From contig NW_021824887.1 in NCBI RefSeq assembly GCF_006345805.1, forward strand, positions 1 through 17,266: 17,266 bases of DNA, written 5' to 3'. The stretch comes from Octopus sinensis. Lineage: Eukaryota. The notes below the pieces were generated by a model that was not told the origin of the DNA, did no database searches, and was given only the letters and a program-made list of their open reading frames with translations. Both the position numbers and the translations under genes were made by a program. Of this stretch, positions 182 through 14,752 are shown in pieces; positions within the stretch are counted from its first letter, which is position 1, and each line of letters starts with the position of its first letter.

Positions 182-360
182 GTATATAATATATATATAT
201 ACGACGGGTTTCTTTCAGTTTCCGTCTACCAAATCCACCCACAAGGCTTTCGTCGGCCCGAGACTATAGCAGAAGACACTTCCTCAAGGTGCCACGAAGA
301 GGGACAGAACCCGGAACCATGTGGTTGGTAAGCAAGCTACTTACCACACAACTGCACCTC
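1..360 (-). mobile_element. CORE-like tRNA-derived SINE (family 1), cut by the window edge, with an internal (TA)/(CA) microsatellite
   Basis: The minus strand reads tRNA-like head gtgtggtaagtagcttgcttaccaaccacatggttccgggttc, then ggcaccttgaggaagtgtcttctgctatagtc (CORE-like) and ggtagacggaaactgaaagaaacccgtcg, then a microsatellite, then the tail half. The same blocks occur at 5069-5405 and 7403-7870. Confidence 0.85.
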
Positions 361-5072: not shown

Positions 5073-5405
5073 GAGTTGTAAGTAGCTTGCTTACCAACTA
5101 CATAGTTCCGGGTTCAATCCCACTGTGTGGCATCTTGGGCAAGTGTCTGCTACTATATCTTCGGACCGACCAAAGACTTGAGAGTGGATTTAGTAGACGG
5201 AAACTGCGTGGAACCCCGTCGCATATGTGTGTGTGTGTGTATTTGCATGTCTTTATGTTTGTCCTTTACATTGTTTGTGTACGTCCTTGTAATGTAGGAT
5301 TTGGCAACTAAACTTCTAAGCAGTGAAGTTAATTTGTCCCACAACTATCTTCAGTGCGGTTCCACAGCATAACCTCAGTCTAATCGCTGAAACACATGAA
5401 CGAAT
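5069..5405 (+). mobile_element. CORE-like tRNA-derived SINE (family 1), near full length
   Basis: Head gtaagtagcttgcttaccaactacatagttccgggttcaatcccactg (B-box-like ggttcaatccc), CORE-like ggcatcttgggcaagtgtct, an internal (TG)n tract, and a decayed tail ending cagtctaatcgctgaaac. Confidence 0.85.
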
Positions 5406-5414
5406 ATTAGAATA

Positions 5415-5826
5415 TATTTCTTTATTACCCACAAGGGGCTAAACACAGAGAGGACAAACAAGGACAGGAAAAGGGATTAAGTCGATTACATCGACCCAGT
5501 GCGAAACTGATACTTTATTTATCGACCCCAAGAGGATGAAAGGCAAAGTCGACCTTGGCGGAATATGAACTCAGAACATAACGACAGACGAAATACCTAT
5601 TTATTTATTACCCACAAGGGGCTAAACACAGAGGGGACAAACAAGGACAGACATAGGTATTAAGTCGATTACATCGACCCCAGTGCGTAACTGGTACTTA
5701 ATTTATCGACTCCGAAAGGACGAAAGGCAAAGTCGACCTCGGCGGAATTTGAACTCGGAATGTAAAGACAGACGAAATACCGCTAAGCATTTCGCCCGGC
5801 GTGCTAACGTTTCTGCCAGCTCGCCG
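5415..5826 (-). mobile_element. tRNA-derived SINE (family 2, tail A) dimer: head + body/tail (5598-5826), then a headless body/tail (5415-5597)
   Basis: The minus strand reads ggcgagctggcagaaacgttagcacgccgggcgaaatgcttagc-ggtatttcgtc...gagttcaaattcc (B box)...ccccttgtgggtaataaataaata, and then restarts at ggtatttcgtc. Confidence 0.92.
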
Positions 5827-6492: not shown

Positions 6493-6892
6493 AATAATCC
6501 CATCTGCTACAGGCACAAGGCCTGGAATTTTCAGGGAGGGAGTAAGTCGATTATCTCAATTCCAGTGCTAGATCGGTGGTTATTTCATCGACATCGGAAG
6601 TATAAAAAGTAAAGCTGACCCCGATGGAATTTGAACTCAACGTAAAGACGGACGAAATACCTATTTCTTTACTACCCACAAGGGGCTAAACACAGAGAGA
6701 ACAAGCAAGGACAGAGAAACGGATTAAGTCAATTATATCGACCCCAGTGCGTAACTGGTACTTATTTAATTGACCCCGAAAGGATAAAAGGCAAAGTCGA
6801 CCTCGGCGGAATTTGAACTCAGAACGTAACGGCAGACGAAATAGCGCTAAGCATTTTCCCCACTGTGGTAATGATTCTGCCAACTCATCACC
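6493..6892 (-). mobile_element. Composite family-2 SINE: diverged head (6846-6892), well-conserved tail-A unit (6662-6845), diverged tail-B body (6493-6661)
   Basis: Same aaata|ggtatttcgtc junction as at 5597/5598. The distal part ends ccaggccttgtgcctgtagcagatgggattatt, the same tail as at 13423-13450 and 16715-16747. Confidence 0.9.
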
Positions 6893-9246: not shown

Positions 9247-9773
9247 GAAGGCTTGGCAAGCCTTCGCTATTCTTCGGCCGGTATGGAAGTCCACTGCTAT
9301 CTCAACTCGAACTAAACTCCGCTTGTTTCGTTCAAACGTACAATCTGTGCTGTTTTTGTATGGCTCTGAAACATGGTGAGCCACATGCAGCAACTACAAG
9401 AAGACCCAGACCTTCATCAACAAATGTCTCCGTCTGAAGTGGTTCGACAGACTGCCAAACACCGACCTGTGGGAAAGGGCCAACCAGGAGCCCATGCATG
9501 TTCAGATTAGACAAAGGAAAAGGAGATGGATCGGACACACACTGCGGAAAGAACCCTCAAATGTGACACGACAAGCACTTGACTGGAACCCGCAGGGGAA
9601 AAGGAAGCGAGGACGCCCGAAGCAGACATTGAAGCGGAGCATTTGGGACGAGCTCAGGACCACCAGCCTAACTTGGGAAGCAGCCAAGAAACACGCCAAT
9701 GACCACAAAAAGTGGAAAACAACTGATAAGGCCCTATGCTCCACTAGGGGCAAAAAGGATTAAGAAGAAGAAG
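9247..9773 (+). mobile_element. 5'-truncated RTE-clade LINE (ORF C-terminus), inactivated, with (GAA)n tail and 8-bp TSD
   Basis: Translates to KAWQAFAILRPVWKSTAISTRTKLRLFRSNV..(frameshift)..LYGSETW*...RRWIGHTLRK...ALDWNPQGKRKRGRPKQT...KD*. The YGSETW, WIGHTLR and GKRKRGRP motifs are typical of RTE. Stop at 9761-9763, tail gaagaagaag, TSD ACCTTGTA at 9239-9246 and 9774-9781. Confidence 0.95.
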
Positions 9774-11634: not shown

Positions 11635-11702
11635 TATATGTGTGTGTGTGTGTATAGATAGGTAGAGAGATAGAGAGAGAGAGAGAGAGACAGATAGATA
11701 GA

Positions 11703-12061
11703 TATGTTTCTTTGTTAGCCACACAGGGCTGCACACAGACAGAACAAATTACAAGGTAGAGCTTTTCTTTTGGGGTAAAAAAGAGGGGGTGGTTTTCGAT
11801 CAAAAGGGATCGTAAAAGGAAAGAAAGAGGATTAAAAAAGGAGAGGATTTTAAAAAAAAGAGGGGGAGAGGGAAAAAAAAGAAAAGGGGAGAGGGAAAAA
11901 AAAGGAAAGGGGAGAGGAAAAAGAAAAAAAAAAGGTTGATCAATTGGGATCGTAATCACAGAAATGTCAATATGAAGTGTAAAGGGGAGGACAGGTGAGG
12001 TCTACCCGTGGAAAGAAAAGCCTACGGAAAAGACCACGGTAACCTCGGTCAATGAAGTCAC
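11703..12061 (-). mobile_element. Probable LINE (L1/Tx1-like) 3' UTR fragment lying within a (GATA)n tract
   Basis: The minus strand has a long pyrimidine-rich tract and ends ccttgtaatttgttctgtctgtgtgcagccctgtgtggctaacaaagaaaca, which aligns with SINE tail A and more loosely with 16414-16467. GATA repeats flank both sides (11692-11702, 12062-12092). No coding part is present, so the clade is inferred. Confidence 0.55.
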
Positions 12062-12093
<32 letters not shown>

Positions 12094-12204
12094 CGTATGC
12101 AATCGTCACTTTCAGCCTGTTCCCTTTCCTTAATTTCACCATTCAATTCCAAATCTCTCTTTGTTACACACAAGTACGTTACATTCTTTCAGAATTTCTA
12201 TGTA

Positions 12205-12385
12205 TCACACAGACACACGTACACACGTACACACGCATGCATATACACAAATACACACACGAACACGCACACACACACACGCACACACACACGCATATAC
12301 TTACCCACATGCACACACATGGACACATGCCCGCCGACACATGCACGTATAGGCACACACACACACACACACACATACATACACA
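12205..12385. repeat. Degenerate (AC)n microsatellite
   Basis: Directly visible. Confidence 0.88.
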
Positions 12386-12519
12386 TGAAGGAATGTGCTA
12401 GAAACATCAGTCAAATCTCGCTCCCGTTATTTCAAACTATCATAAATACCCTGGATGCTGCTGTGGACGATACATATCCAAAAAGGCAGGATGGTCATCG
12501 AAGAAACGCCCCAATGCCG

Positions 12520-13450
12520 AGTCGCTGGCAGAATCGTTAGCACGCCGGACAAAATATTTACCGACATTTCTTTCGCATTTACGTTCTGGTTTCAAATTCC
12601 ACCGAAGTCAACTTTGCCTTTTATCGTTTCGGGGGGTCGATAAATTAAGTACCAGTCATGAACTGAGGTCGATGTTCGAGTATCCCTCTCCCCACAAATT
12701 CCAGTCGCTGGCAGAATCGTTAGCACGCCAGACAAAATATTTACCGACATTTCTTTCGCATTTACGTTCTGGTTTCAAATTCCACCGAAGTCAACTTTGC
12801 CTTTTATCGTTTCGGGGGGTCGATAAATTAAGTACCAGTCATGAACTGAGGTCGATGTTCGAGTATCCCTCTCCCCACAAATTCAGTGCTGCAGAATCGT
12901 TAGCACGCCAGACAAAATATTTACCGACATTTCTTTCGCATTTAACGTTCGGTTTCAATTCACCGAATCGTAGTCAACTTTCGGTCAATCCTTTCGTTGG
13001 GGTCGGTAAATTAAGTACCAGTCATGAACTGAGGTCGATGTTCGAGTATCCCTCTCCACCCAATCCAGTCGCTGGCAGAATCGTTAGCACGCCAGACAAA
13101 TTTACCGACAGTTCTTTCGCATTCCGTTCTGGTTTCAAATTCGCCGAAGTCAACTTGCCTTTTATCGTTTCGGGGGGTCGATCATTAAGTACCAGTCATG
13201 AACTGAGGTCGATGTTCGAGTATCCCTCTCCCCACAAATCCAGTTCGCTGGCAGAATCGTTAGCACGCCAACAAATATTACCGATTTTGACATTTCTTTC
13301 GCATTTACGTTCTGGTTTCAAATCCACCGAAGTCACTTTGCCTTATCGTTTCGGGGTCGATAAATTAAGTACCAGTCATGAACTGAGGTCGATGTTCGAG
13401 TATCCCTCTCCCCACAAATTCCAGGCCTTGCGCCTATAATAGAAAGGATT
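12520..13450 (+). repeat. Tandem array of five SINE-body units (183/182/182/175/181 bp) with a single tail B (13423-13450)
   Basis: Units begin with agtcgctggcagaatcgttagcacgcc (or close variants) at 12520, 12703, 12885, 13067 and 13242. Each contains ggtttcaaattcc-like, aagtaccagtcatgaactgaggtcgatgttcgagtatccctctcc blocks. Only the last unit continues into aggccttgcgcctataatagaaaggatt. Confidence 0.95.
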
Positions 13451-13815
13451 TTAATACTCCCCTAAAATTAACACAATAACGACACACTTACACACAGTTC
13501 CATCAACCCGCTGGCTAACGCTCTTATGTAAGTATGGAACACTCACGCTTTCAAACTTAGTTTTTCCTCCTCTCTCTATCTTGGTCTGCCGTACAACAAG
13601 CTCATTCATTCATTCATTTATTATCTCTCTCTATCTCGCAGACGAGCGCGCCTTTTCAAATATTGTTTGTCTGTCTATCTCTCTCTATTTAAACTCCTCT
13701 CTCTCTTTCACGATCTCTCTCTCTCTCCTACACTTAACTTCATTCATTGTTCTGAGGACCAGCGTGCTTCCATACATACCATCACATCCTCTCTCAGTTT
13801 TTTAGCAGACGTTAA

Positions 13816-13816
<1 letters not shown>

Positions 13817-13907
<91 letters not shown>

Positions 13908-14143
13908 GTCTGTCTATCTGTCTATCTATCTATTTTTCTTCTTTCTATCGCCATATTTTGCTCTCTTTCTCTTTTTCTATCGCCCCAACTTCTCTCTCTC
14001 TCTCTCTCTCGCTCGCTCGCTTTTCCTCACTTCCGCTCTCTGTCTATCTACTCAACCATCTCTATCTATCGCTGTATTTATTCTCCATTCTCTCTCCTTC
14101 CTTTCTCCCTCTCTCCTTCTTCACTTTTCTTTTCTTCCTCTCC

Positions 14144-14203
<60 letters not shown>

Positions 14204-14204
14204 T

Positions 14205-14239
<35 letters not shown>

Positions 14240-14254
14240 ATCTATCTATCTTTT

Positions 14255-14311
<57 letters not shown>

Positions 14312-14312
14312 A
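13817..14312. repeat. Pyrimidine-rich field of (TCTA)n, (TCTG)n and (TC)n microsatellites
   Basis: Directly visible; it explains the YLSI-repeat ORF. Confidence 0.9.
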
Positions 14313-14370: not shown

Positions 14371-14752
14371 ACTGCTGCTGCTGCTACTTGTGCAACGGGT
14401 GCAACGGGTGTTGTTTCTGCAGCTACAAATGTTGTTTTAACTGATGTTATTGTTGTTTCTGCTGTCGCTGCCGCTGCTGCTGCTGTCGCTACTACTACTA
14501 CTACTACTACTACTACTATACTACTACTACTACTACTACTACTACTACCACTACCACCACCACCACCACACTACTACTACTACTACTGCTACTACTACTA
14601 CTACTACTGATGATGATGATTTTGCTGCTGATACTCCTGCTGCTACTGCTGCTACTGCTGCTGCTGCTGCTACTGCTACTGCTACTACTACTACTGATGC
14701 TGCTGCTGCTGCTACTACTGCTGCTGCTGTCGTCGTAGTCGTCGTCGTCATC
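14371..14752. repeat. Compound trinucleotide repeat field (CTG, CTA, CCA, ATG, GTC)
   Basis: Successive triplet runs; they explain the poly-A/T/L/Y/S/V ORFs. Confidence 0.92.

What the first reader, a model, noticed from the sequence alone, without database searches (positions are those of the whole stretch)
12520..13450. SINE-born minisatellite: five head-to-tail copies of one SINE body with a single tail
All five units share private variants not seen in the other family-2 copies here (gacaaaatatttaccgacatttctttcgc, ggtttcaaattcc, gtcatgaactgaggtcgatgttcgagtatccc), so amplification was local and followed decay of one insertion. The junction ttccag|tcgctgg fuses the pre-tail ccag to the head-side ccgag|tcgctgg, a short microhomology consistent with circle formation and rolling-circle reinsertion, or with slippage and unequal exchange. 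Units 1-2 are nearly identical, while units 3-5 differ mainly by small indels. The B box is altered (gagttcaaa to ggtttcaaa), so Pol III activity is doubtful. This could be a satellite caught at birth. The indel-rich pattern also resembles unpolished long-read error, so copy number and divergence may be partly artefactual.
Basis: partly seen in the sequence, partly recalled or inferred. Interest (0 to 1): 0.7.

Follow-up and report, generated by a model that had tools for sequence, protein, structure and literature searches.

The report
Five-unit tandem array from a SINE
A 183-bp internal piece of one old, decayed copy of a very common octopus SINE was duplicated on the spot into five head-to-tail copies. 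This is an already described and fairly ordinary way for small tandem repeats to arise, and most of the apparent difference between the copies looks like assembly-consensus error.

Summary
Window 12522-13424 carries five head-to-tail units of about 183 bp. Each unit is the body of a 'family-2' SINE. A 9-nt head remnant occurs once, before unit 1. One tail, GCCTTGCGCCTATAATAGAAAGGATT, follows unit 5.

The units share 22-28 of about 28 differences from the family consensus. The best dispersed copies share at most 6 of 27. A 34-nt private motif occurs five times in the 2.72-Gb assembly, all in this array. The junction 22-mer occurs once.

Differences private to single units are 26-30 small indels against 5-13 substitutions. 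Shared differences are 28 substitutions against 3-5 indels. A comparable array on chromosome scaffold C8 differs by substitutions only between its first two units. Unit divergence here is therefore probably consensus error, and it cannot be used to date the array.

The phenomenon is known as SINE-derived satellites in squamates. It is not rare in this genome. A second independent family-2 array exists on C8. The sister SINE family carries one fixed tandem junction at 59,175 or more sites.

Verdict: a real but ordinary single-locus array, a new member of a known kind. One oddity is unexplained: a 345-codon open frame runs through all five units.

The parts
12506..12512 (+). Candidate left target-site duplication ACGCCCC, directly abutting the SINE head remnant
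   Evidence: It matches ACTCCCC at 13456-13462 in 6 of 7 positions and sits where a duplication should. The score is not above random segment pairs (P=0.61), so the result is inconclusive.
12513..12521 (+). SINE head remnant AATGCCGAG (family consensus AAGGCGGCGAG). It is present once only and is not part of the repeated unit.
   Evidence: Alignment to 16 dispersed family-2 copies and their consensus.
12522..12704 (+). Unit 1 (183 nt), covering about consensus positions 9-191 of the SINE. It keeps the ancestral G at unit position 26 (CCGGAC).
12705..12886 (+). Unit 2 (182 nt). It differs from U1 by G26A (at a CpG) and by one C deletion in TTCCAG.
12887..13068 (+). Unit 3 (182 nt). It is the most disturbed unit, with 10-14 indel events and a scrambled centre, but its 3' 60 nt are identical to the other units.
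13069..13243 (+). Unit 4 (175 nt), with six deletions, mostly 1 nt in short base runs, and four private substitutions.
13244..13424 (+). Unit 5 (181 nt), with nine indel events. It continues without a break into the tail.
13425..13450 (+). The single SINE 3' tail region GCCTTGCGCCTATAATAGAAAGGATT (consensus GCCTTGTGCCTATAGTAGAAAGGATT), followed by a decayed (ATT)n remnant TTAAT.
   Evidence: The intact body-to-tail string occurs 17,159 times or more in the genome.
13456..13462 (+). Candidate right target-site duplication ACTCCCC
   Evidence: inconclusive.
12696..12716 (+). The one clean unit junction AAATTCCAG|TCGCTGGCAGAA, with 2-nt AG microhomology to the head context CCGAG|TCGCTGG.
   Evidence: The 22-mer is unique in the assembly at up to 2 mismatches. 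Only this contig spans the junction in a DNA search, and all other hits stop at it.
12588..12600 (+). B-box-like motif of U1, GGTTTCAAATTCC (family consensus GAGTTCAAATTCC). All five units carry the same two changes.
   Evidence: columns 72-73.
12402..13439 (+). Stop-free reading frame of 345 codons running from the left flank through all five units into the tail.
   Evidence: Random re-placement of the observed indels keeps a frame open in 0.025% of trials. No protein relatives were found.

Best explanation
A family-2 SINE of Octopus sinensis inserted once at this site. The family is about 217 nt plus an (ATT)n tail, with at least 17,000 copies.

The copy sat there long enough to collect about 28 substitutions, roughly 13% divergence. 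These include CpG decay and two changes in the B-box-like motif.

A DNA-level, non-homologous event then duplicated an internal 183-bp segment in place. The segment runs from just after the first 9 nt of the head to the CCAG that precedes the tail. The event could have been replication slippage, template switching or end joining. At most 2 nt of microhomology was involved.

Once two units lay side by side, unequal sister-chromatid exchange or replication slippage between them raised the number to five. The G-to-A change shared by U2-U5 but absent from U1 suggests that the later copies descend from the second unit.

The array has no demonstrated function. It is a neutral structural variant at the 'library' stage of tandem-repeat evolution.

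Most differences private to U3-U5 are consensus errors of a PacBio-based assembly inside a tandem repeat, not evolution.

Shown here: the architecture, the single-locus origin, the fact that decay preceded amplification, and the abnormal indel spectrum.

Inferred: the molecular mechanism, the order of duplications, and that the indels are errors.
For: - Architecture: five units, one head remnant, one tail.
- Decay before amplification: 28 substitutions (16 transitions) and 3-5 indels separate the array from the family consensus. Each unit carries 22-28 of the 28 derived states. The 16 best dispersed copies and the other family-2 copy in the window share 0-6 of 27. The nearest genomic copies are only 80-86% identical to U1.
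- Single locus: the junction 22-mer occurs once. The junction-spanning DNA query matches in full only on this contig. The private 34-mer has five hits, all here.
- Not RNA-mediated: the junction joins an internal site (CCAG, about 26 nt before the 3' end) to an internal site (about position 9), not the ends of a transcript.
- The same structure exists on a chromosome scaffold: C8 near 101.496 Mb has three units of 198 bp, one head, one tail, its own junction and a 14/15 target-site duplication.
- Error reading of the indels: unit-private differences are 26-30 indel events against 5-13 substitutions, with Fisher P of 3e-4 or less against the shared differences. U4 and U5 events are nearly all 1-nt deletions in short base runs. 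The first two C8 units differ by 10 substitutions and no indel. Other SINE copies on this contig align to relatives without gaps.
- Assembly identity: it matches the PacBio and Hi-C O. sinensis assembly by its statistics.
Against: - No reads, second haplotype or other species could be consulted. Both flanks are unique in the assembly. Copy number and the error reading are therefore unverified.
- The contig is a 17-kb unplaced scaffold.
- The target-site duplication expected around a single insertion is not statistically supported.
- The indels are not spread evenly. U1 and U2 are clean, and the 3' 60 nt of every unit are identical.
- The net length change between successive units is always a multiple of three, so a 345-codon frame stays open. 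Purely random errors would rarely do that.
- The 2-nt microhomology does not point to any particular mechanism.
Confidence: 0.65

Rival explanations
1. The array was made at the RNA or cDNA stage. Reverse transcriptase switched templates repeatedly during one retrotransposition, or copied a multimeric or circular template, and the five units were inserted together.
For: There is one head, one tail and possibly one pair of target-site duplications. In the sister family 1, one fixed junction recurs at 59,175 or more sites. Its units within a locus are no more alike (88-95%) than units from different loci (88-92%). Multimers formed before or at insertion therefore do exist in this genome.
Against: The source would have had to be a unique copy about 13% decayed, with a damaged B-box-like motif, that left no other progeny. 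Both sides of the junction are internal sites rather than RNA ends. Four identical switches would be needed. The junction is found nowhere else.
Confidence: 0.07
2. Assembly artefact. The true locus has one or two units, and the consensus step inflated and scrambled the array.
For: The contig is a small unplaced scaffold of a PacBio CLR assembly. U3-U5 carry an error-like excess of small indels. No second copy of the locus exists to check against.
Against: Overlap assemblers do not invent direct tandem copies, and a 0.9-kb array lies well inside one long read (general knowledge). U1 differs from U2-U5 at a CpG transition shared by four units, so at least two unit types are real. An analogous clean array exists on scaffold C8. 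The rest of the contig aligns without gaps to related repeats.
Confidence: 0.1
3. Circle route. A 183-bp body circle formed by microhomology, was copied by rolling circle, and re-entered the resident copy by homologous recombination.
For: It gives the same end product, with head remnant and tail each retained once and all junctions identical. The period is close to nucleosome size.
Against: Nothing in the sequence separates this route from unequal exchange. The microhomology is only 2 nt. A burst would leave all units equally related, but G26A separates U1 from U2-U5, and that site fits stepwise growth better.
Confidence: 0.1
4. The array is, or is becoming, part of a translated sequence. The indels are real, and selection keeps the 345-codon frame open.
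For: The frame 12402-13439 is open through all units. Spacing of the invariant 3' blocks is 183, 183, 174 and 180, all multiples of three. Randomly re-placed indels keep a frame open in 0.025% of trials.
Against: The peptide is not conserved between units, since U4 is read partly in another frame. No related protein was found among 5.8 billion, and there is no exact record. The only Pfam hit is a summed repeat artefact with no single stretch passing.
Confidence: 0.03

Closest known systems
SINE-derived satellites (sSats) of squamate reptiles (Vassetzky, Kosushkin and Ryskov 2023, Mob DNA; PMC10702118)
   Same: These are tandem head-to-tail units made from a portion of a SINE. A longer terminal unit reaches the SINE terminus. 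Unit length is in the 150-200-bp range. Many genomes hold short single loci of a few units that arose independently. The proposed origin is a primary duplication followed by unequal recombination.
   Different: This is a mollusc, and the authors say they do not know whether sSats occur outside squamates. It is one locus with five units, with no multi-locus spread and no homogenisation. Both ends keep SINE termini, which that paper lists as the minor variant. Chromosomal position is unknown because the contig is unplaced.
Family-1 SINE multimers of the same genome (window 5415-5826 and 6591-6886, minus strand)
   Same: They come from a related SINE with the same head and central body. They are head-to-tail units without an intervening head, and the period is about 184 bp against 183 bp here.
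   Different: Their junction, AAAGAAATAG|GTATTTCGTCTG, joins the exact SINE 3' terminus to internal position about 50. It occurs at 59,175 or more sites. Units within a locus share no private variants. They behave as a dispersed multimeric element, whereas the array studied is private to one locus and formed after decay.
Second family-2 array on scaffold C8 near 101.496 Mb (locus L085)
   Same: It has the same SINE family and the same plan: one complete head, body units restarting at CTGGCAG, and one tail. The units share private variants. A 14/15 target-site duplication flanks the whole array.
   Different: It has three units of 198 bp. The junction lies 8 nt further into the tail (…CCAGGCCTTGTG|CTGGCAG). 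Divergence between its first two units is by substitution only. It is an independent event.
Minisatellites / VNTRs and transposon-derived tandem repeats in general (reviews listed, e.g. PMC9659126, PMC10048060)
   Same: It is a short array of tandem units at a single euchromatic-type locus, derived from part of a mobile element, and expected to vary in copy number.
   Different: The 183-bp unit is longer than the classical 10-100-bp minisatellite unit. Polymorphism has not been shown.

Membership tests
SINE (dispersed, non-autonomous retroposon), 'family 2' of this genome | High copy number, dispersed over all chromosomes | tested here: met
   The body-to-tail 35-mer occurs 17,159 times at up to 3 mismatches, against 0 for the reversed control, on all large scaffolds. 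There were 4,620 first-look candidates for U1.
SINE (dispersed, non-autonomous retroposon), 'family 2' of this genome | Defined 5' and 3' ends, a simple-repeat tail and target-site duplications | tested here: met
   Sixteen copies aligned with flanks start at AAGGCGGCGAG and end in GGATT(ATT)n. The C8 element has a 14/15 duplication. For the array itself the duplication is inconclusive.
SINE (dispersed, non-autonomous retroposon), 'family 2' of this genome | Head derived from tRNA (or 5S/7SL) with internal Pol III A and B boxes | tested here: inconclusive
   A-box-like TGGCAGAATCG and B-box-like GAGTTCAAATTCC are visible by eye. ARAGORN finds no tRNA. Rfam finds no tRNA match even at E up to 10 on single copies.
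SINE (dispersed, non-autonomous retroposon), 'family 2' of this genome | 3' region shared with a partner LINE | not tested
   No partner LINE was sought.
SINE-derived satellite (sSat, PMC10702118) | Tandem units derived from a portion of a SINE | tested here: met
   Units cover about consensus positions 9-191 of 217.
SINE-derived satellite (sSat, PMC10702118) | Terminal unit extended to the SINE terminus | tested here: met
   U5 continues into the tail, and U1 is preceded by the head remnant.
SINE-derived satellite (sSat, PMC10702118) | Satellite-like behaviour: many loci and/or long arrays with homogenised units | tested here: not met
   The junction and the private motif are confined to this one locus, and there are only five units. 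This corresponds to the 'few short loci' class of that paper, not to a satellite proper.
SINE-derived satellite (sSat, PMC10702118) | Subtelomeric preference | not testable with these tools
   The window is a whole unplaced 17,266-bp scaffold.
Dispersed multimeric (dimeric-master) SINE | The same unit junction at many loci | tested here: not met
   The array junction occurs at one place in 2.72 Gb. For contrast, the family-1 junction has 59,175 hits.
Minisatellite / VNTR | Copy-number polymorphism between individuals or haplotypes | not testable with these tools
   No reads or second haplotype are available, and the flanks are unique in the assembly.

The most novel reading that the evidence does not exclude
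The array is real and is one visible step of a genome-wide tendency of these octopus SINEs to turn into tandem repeats of about one nucleosome length: 183 bp here, 198 bp on C8, and about 184 bp in family 1.

Family 1 has already spread one fixed junction to 59,175 or more sites. That would make Octopus the first non-squamate, and the first invertebrate, with SINE-derived satellites on a large scale.

Two routes would operate side by side. One is post-insertion DNA duplication, as in this array. The other is formation before or at insertion, as in family 1. The second route could work by reverse transcriptase jumping from the 5' end of a head-less SINE RNA to the 3' end of the next.
Probability: 0.3. 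Interest if true: 0.55.

Novelty: new member of a known kind. Interest (0 to 1): 0.27.

Why it matters
On its own the array matters little. It is a probably neutral 0.9-kb tandem duplication inside a dead SINE. At best it could serve as a variable-number marker, and as a clean example of the first ('library') step of tandem-repeat birth in which decay clearly preceded amplification.

Its value lies in context. SINE-derived tandem repeats have been documented systematically only in squamates (PMC10702118). Recent octopus repeat annotations that put SINEs at 11.6% of the genome do not mention them (PMC13282606). The counts obtained here suggest that a sizeable share of the octopus 'SINE' fraction is in fact tandemly organised. 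That affects repeat annotation, copy-number and age estimates, and assembly quality in these genomes.

The finding is also a caution. Divergence between units of a tandem array in a long-read assembly should not be read as age.

Tried and rejected
- **Second allele or haplotig.** Both flanks (11940-12521 and 13425-13815) were searched in the assembly. Only repeats matched, and no second copy of the locus exists.
- **Independent assemblies through proteins.** The translated flank+U1+U2 frame had no hit among 5.8 billion proteins. The 255-aa ATG-started ORF is not on record.
- **tRNA origin of the head.** ARAGORN found none. Rfam on the whole window and on single copies gave only microsatellite-driven miRNA noise and a weak mir-344-like hairpin.
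- **Target-site duplication of the array.** ACGCCCC/ACTCCCC is correctly placed but not above chance (P=0.61).
- **Broad pattern AAGTACCAGT N{60,90} CGTTAGCAC for tail-less junctions.** It gave 669 hits, but most are ordinary adjacent or internally deleted SINEs.
- **Narrow junction pattern.** Of its 12 hits, only the window, C8 (two hits) and C30 are true body-to-body junctions. The rest are target-site or tail look-alikes.
- **Pfam hit of the array ORF to IRF-2BP1_2_M.** It scored 24.9 bits with no single stretch passing. I rejected it as a summed repeat artefact.
- **Similar restart point (CTGGCAG) in the window and C8 arrays.** I rejected it as evidence for a preferred breakpoint, because the search pattern demanded it.
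- **Dating the amplification from unit divergence.** I rejected this because the differences are mostly error-like.
- **The original O. sinensis genome paper.** It is not held in the library.

Full report
**Source of the window.** The window is the whole of scaffold C1358 (17,266 bp) of an assembly of 2,719,151,902 bases in 13,516 scaffolds, in which C10 is 105,892,736 bp. These figures are identical to those tabulated for the PacBio and Hi-C assembly of Octopus sinensis: 13,516 scaffolds, 2719.2 Mb and N50 105.9 Mb, with 86% in chromosome-scale scaffolds (PMC10700109). I take the identification as safe. The contig is one of the small unplaced pieces. It is full of microsatellites and contains several SINE copies.

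**The observation.** Tandem Repeats Finder reports a single long-period array at 12520-13424, with period 183, 5.0 copies, 88% matches and 6% indels.
- Anchoring on the invariant GAATCGTTAGCACGCC gives five units of 183, 182, 182, 175 and 181 nt.
- I aligned 16 dispersed relatives with their flanks. This gives the family-2 consensus AAGGCGGCGAGCTGGCAG…CACAAATTCCAGGCCTTGTGCCTATAGTAGAAAGGATT(ATT)n, 217 nt before the tail repeat.
- Against that consensus each unit covers about positions 9-191.
- The first 9 nt of the head (here AATGCCGAG) occur once, before U1.
- The last 26 nt plus a decayed ATT remnant occur once, after U5.
There is also only one head remnant.

**Local or dispersed?** All tests point to a local origin.
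- A 131-nt query across the junction matches in full only on this contig. Every other hit stops at the junction.
- The nearest dispersed copies are 80-86% identical to U1, whereas the units are 87-99% identical to each other.
- The array differs from the family consensus by 28 substitutions (16 transitions, several CG-to-CA or TG changes) and 3-5 indels.
- Each unit carries 22-28 of these 28 derived states. The best-matching dispersed copies carry 0-6 of 27.
- An exhaustive pattern search shows the 34-nt private motif exactly five times, all in the array, with nothing else within 3 mismatches.
- The insertion therefore decayed by about 13% (Jukes-Cantor about 0.145) before the segment was amplified, and the amplified form never spread.
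- With the calibration used for O. vulgaris repeats (JC 0.09 is about 25 My and 0.2 is about 56 My; PMC13282606), the insertion would be roughly 40 My old. That is only an order-of-magnitude estimate.

**Mechanism.**
- Both sides of the junction are internal SINE sites. The left side lies about 26 nt before the 3' end and the right side about 9 nt after the 5' end. This does not fit end-to-end template jumping of a reverse transcriptase.
- Amplification followed decay, which argues for a DNA-level event in place.
- The two breakpoints share only AG (CCGAG|TCGCTGG and TTCCAG|GCCTT). Random joins give 2 nt or more of microhomology about 16% of the time, so microhomology carries no weight.
- One informative site exists. 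U1 keeps the ancestral G of CCGG, while U2-U5 have A. This suggests growth from the second unit by unequal exchange or slippage. It also shows that at least two unit types are real.
- A circle with rolling-circle copying and homologous re-entry would give the same product and cannot be excluded.
- A target-site duplication, ACGCCCC/ACTCCCC, sits at the right places but is not significant.

**Are the differences between units real?** The evidence is mixed but leans towards consensus error.
- Differences private to single units are 26-30 indel events against 5-13 substitutions, depending on alignment parameters.
- The differences shared by all units, which must be real, are 28 substitutions against 3-5 indels. 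Fisher P lies between 8e-8 and 3e-4.
- U4 and U5 events are almost all 1-nt deletions in runs of two to six identical bases. Three of the four private substitutions in U4 are transversions.
- In the analogous array on scaffold C8, the first two units differ by 10 substitutions and no indel.
- Other SINE copies on this contig align to relatives over 120-220 nt without a gap.
- The excess of indels is thus specific to U3-U5. It has the signature of long-read consensus error that short-read polishing could not repair inside a tandem repeat.
- The reading is not proven. The disturbance is uneven, since U1, U2 and the last 60 nt of every unit are clean. It is also oddly frame-neutral, as described in the section on the open frame.
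- In either case the unit divergence cannot be used to date the amplification.
- I could find no second copy of the locus and no independent assembly.

**How unusual is it?** It is not very unusual.
- A search for the body end followed within 14 nt by the body start found 12 sites against 0 in the control. Four are true body-to-body junctions: the window, two on C8 and one on C30.
- The C8 locus has three 198-bp units, one complete head, one tail, its own junction (…CCAGGCCTTGTG|CTGGCAG), private variants shared by its units, and a 14/15 target-site duplication around the whole array. It is an independent event of the same kind on a chromosome scaffold.
- The search required 18 exact bases in a family that is 15-20% diverged, so the true number of such loci is surely higher.
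- Family 2 has at least 17,159 normal body-to-tail continuities, so these arrays remain a small minority.

**The sister family.**
- Two family-1 SINEs in the window (5415-5826 and 6591-6886, minus strand) each consist of a full element followed directly by a second unit starting at internal position about 50. Both have the same junction, AAATAG|GTATTTCGTC.
- That junction (22-mer, up to 1 mismatch) occurs 59,175 times in the genome, against 0-1 for the reversed control. It often occurs in runs spaced 183-185 bp. Up to seven successive junctions appear among the first hundred rows.
- A second fixed junction, AAAGAAATAAG|AAACGTTAGCAC, occurs 5,064 times.
- In the few multi-unit loci I hold, units within a locus are no more alike (88-95%) than units from different loci (88-92%). 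These multimers were apparently formed before or at insertion.
- They are thus a dispersed multimeric family. It applies to family 1, not to the array under study.
- I did not find this described in the octopus repeat papers I could search, but my search was limited.

**Comparison with what is known.**
- Vassetzky et al. (PMC10702118) describe SINE-derived satellites in 56 squamate genomes. They are tandem units from portions of SINEs, usually with a longer terminal unit reaching the SINE terminus, and with a minor variant in which both termini are kept.
- In that study many genomes have only a few short loci of independent origin. The authors place these loci in the first, 'library', step of satellite emergence and note that most primary duplications remain single instances.
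- The authors state that they do not know whether such repeats exist outside squamates.
- The array here meets the structural criteria. It does not meet the satellite-like criteria of many loci, long arrays and homogenisation. I therefore file it as a new member of a known kind, at the earliest stage, in a new phylum.
- Its tRNA ancestry could not be confirmed with ARAGORN or Rfam. The A- and B-box-like motifs are seen only by eye. All units have GGTTTC where the family has GAGTTC, so loss of Pol III promoter strength is plausible but untested.

**An unexplained detail.**
- A stop-free frame of 345 codons (12402-13439) runs through the whole array.
- U1 is open in one frame and 183 = 61 x 3, so a perfect array would be open trivially. 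After 26-30 small indels it should not be.
- The invariant 3' blocks are spaced 183, 183, 174 and 180 nt, all multiples of three. The simple chance of that is 1/27.
- Random re-placement of the observed indels keeps a frame open in 0.025% of 20,000 trials.
- The peptide is not conserved between units. It has no relatives, and the one Pfam hit is an artefact. I therefore give the coding reading about 3%.
It is nevertheless the one fact that sits badly with 'random consensus errors'. Reads and RNA data would settle it.

**Verdict.** The feature is real in structure with about 90% confidence. It is mechanistically ordinary and belongs to a known kind. The between-unit divergence is probably an artefact. 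The more interesting lead is the genome-wide tandem organisation of the sister SINE family, which lies outside the finding's coordinates and is recorded under things noticed in passing.

Noticed in passing
window 5415-5826 (-) and 6591-6886 (-); genome-wide: Family-1 SINEs occur as a head plus two or more units of about 184 bp with one fixed junction, AAAGAAATAG|GTATTTCGTCTG. The junction has 59,175 hits in the genome at up to 1 mismatch, against 0-1 for the control. Hits often form runs spaced 183-185 bp, for example seven junctions at C1:12139147-12140248. Units within a locus are no closer to each other than to units elsewhere. This looks like a dispersed multimeric SINE or a SINE-derived satellite on a large scale.
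   Followed up: partly
L083 (C3 near 59.62 Mb); genome-wide: A second fixed family-1 junction, AAAGAAATAAG|AAACGTTAGCAC, has 5,064 hits. L083 holds a three-unit array of period 204.
   Followed up: partly
L085/L086 (C8:101,496,100-101,496,720, minus strand): An independent family-2 array has three units of 198 bp, one head, one tail and the junction CCAGGCCTTGTG|CTGGCAG. A 14/15 target-site duplication, TATAG(T/A)TTTATTAGT, flanks it. Its first two units differ by substitutions only.
   Followed up: yes
L092 (C30 near 6.380 Mb): About 60 nt of a SINE body end is joined directly (…AAATTCCAG|GTGAGCTGGCAG…) to a nearly complete family-2 SINE. This is a 1.3-unit tail-less junction of yet another kind.
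   Followed up: no
window 12402-13439 (+): A 345-codon stop-free frame runs through all five units despite the many indels. Spacing between the invariant blocks is always a multiple of three. A simulation puts the chance at 0.00025. No protein relatives were found.
   Followed up: partly
L066, L073, L078, L079, L081 (alignment, right flanks): Several family-2 SINEs are followed, straight after their (ATT)n tail, by the head of another SINE. This suggests preferential insertion into ATT-repeat tails and explains many full-length head-to-tail pairs.
   Followed up: no
window 11650-12093: A young repeat has a 122-nt core that is 98-99% identical, without indels, to more than 30 copies on many scaffolds. 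It is interrupted and followed by variable microsatellites.
   Followed up: no
window 9380-9763 (+): An open frame with a basic motif (…NPQGKRKRGRPKQTLKR…) is reminiscent, from memory only, of the C-terminal part of LINE ORF2 proteins. It has no Pfam match.
   Followed up: no
window 13816-14312 and 14489-14729: A very long (ATCT)n tract of about 126 copies lies about 0.4 kb downstream of the array. It is followed by (CTA)n and (TGC)n trinucleotide tracts. Such surroundings may help explain why the contig stayed unplaced.
   Followed up: no
window 5658-5716; L085 1348-1408: The SINE body contains a conserved hairpin (GTCGAT…CCAGT…ACTGG…ATCGAC). Rfam picks it up only as a very weak mir-344-like match, with E of 2.9-4.9.
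   Followed up: no
window 206-347 and 5075-5216: A pair of inverted copies (142 nt, 82% complementary) belongs to another repeat family, which is also seen in loci L043 and L049.
   Followed up: no
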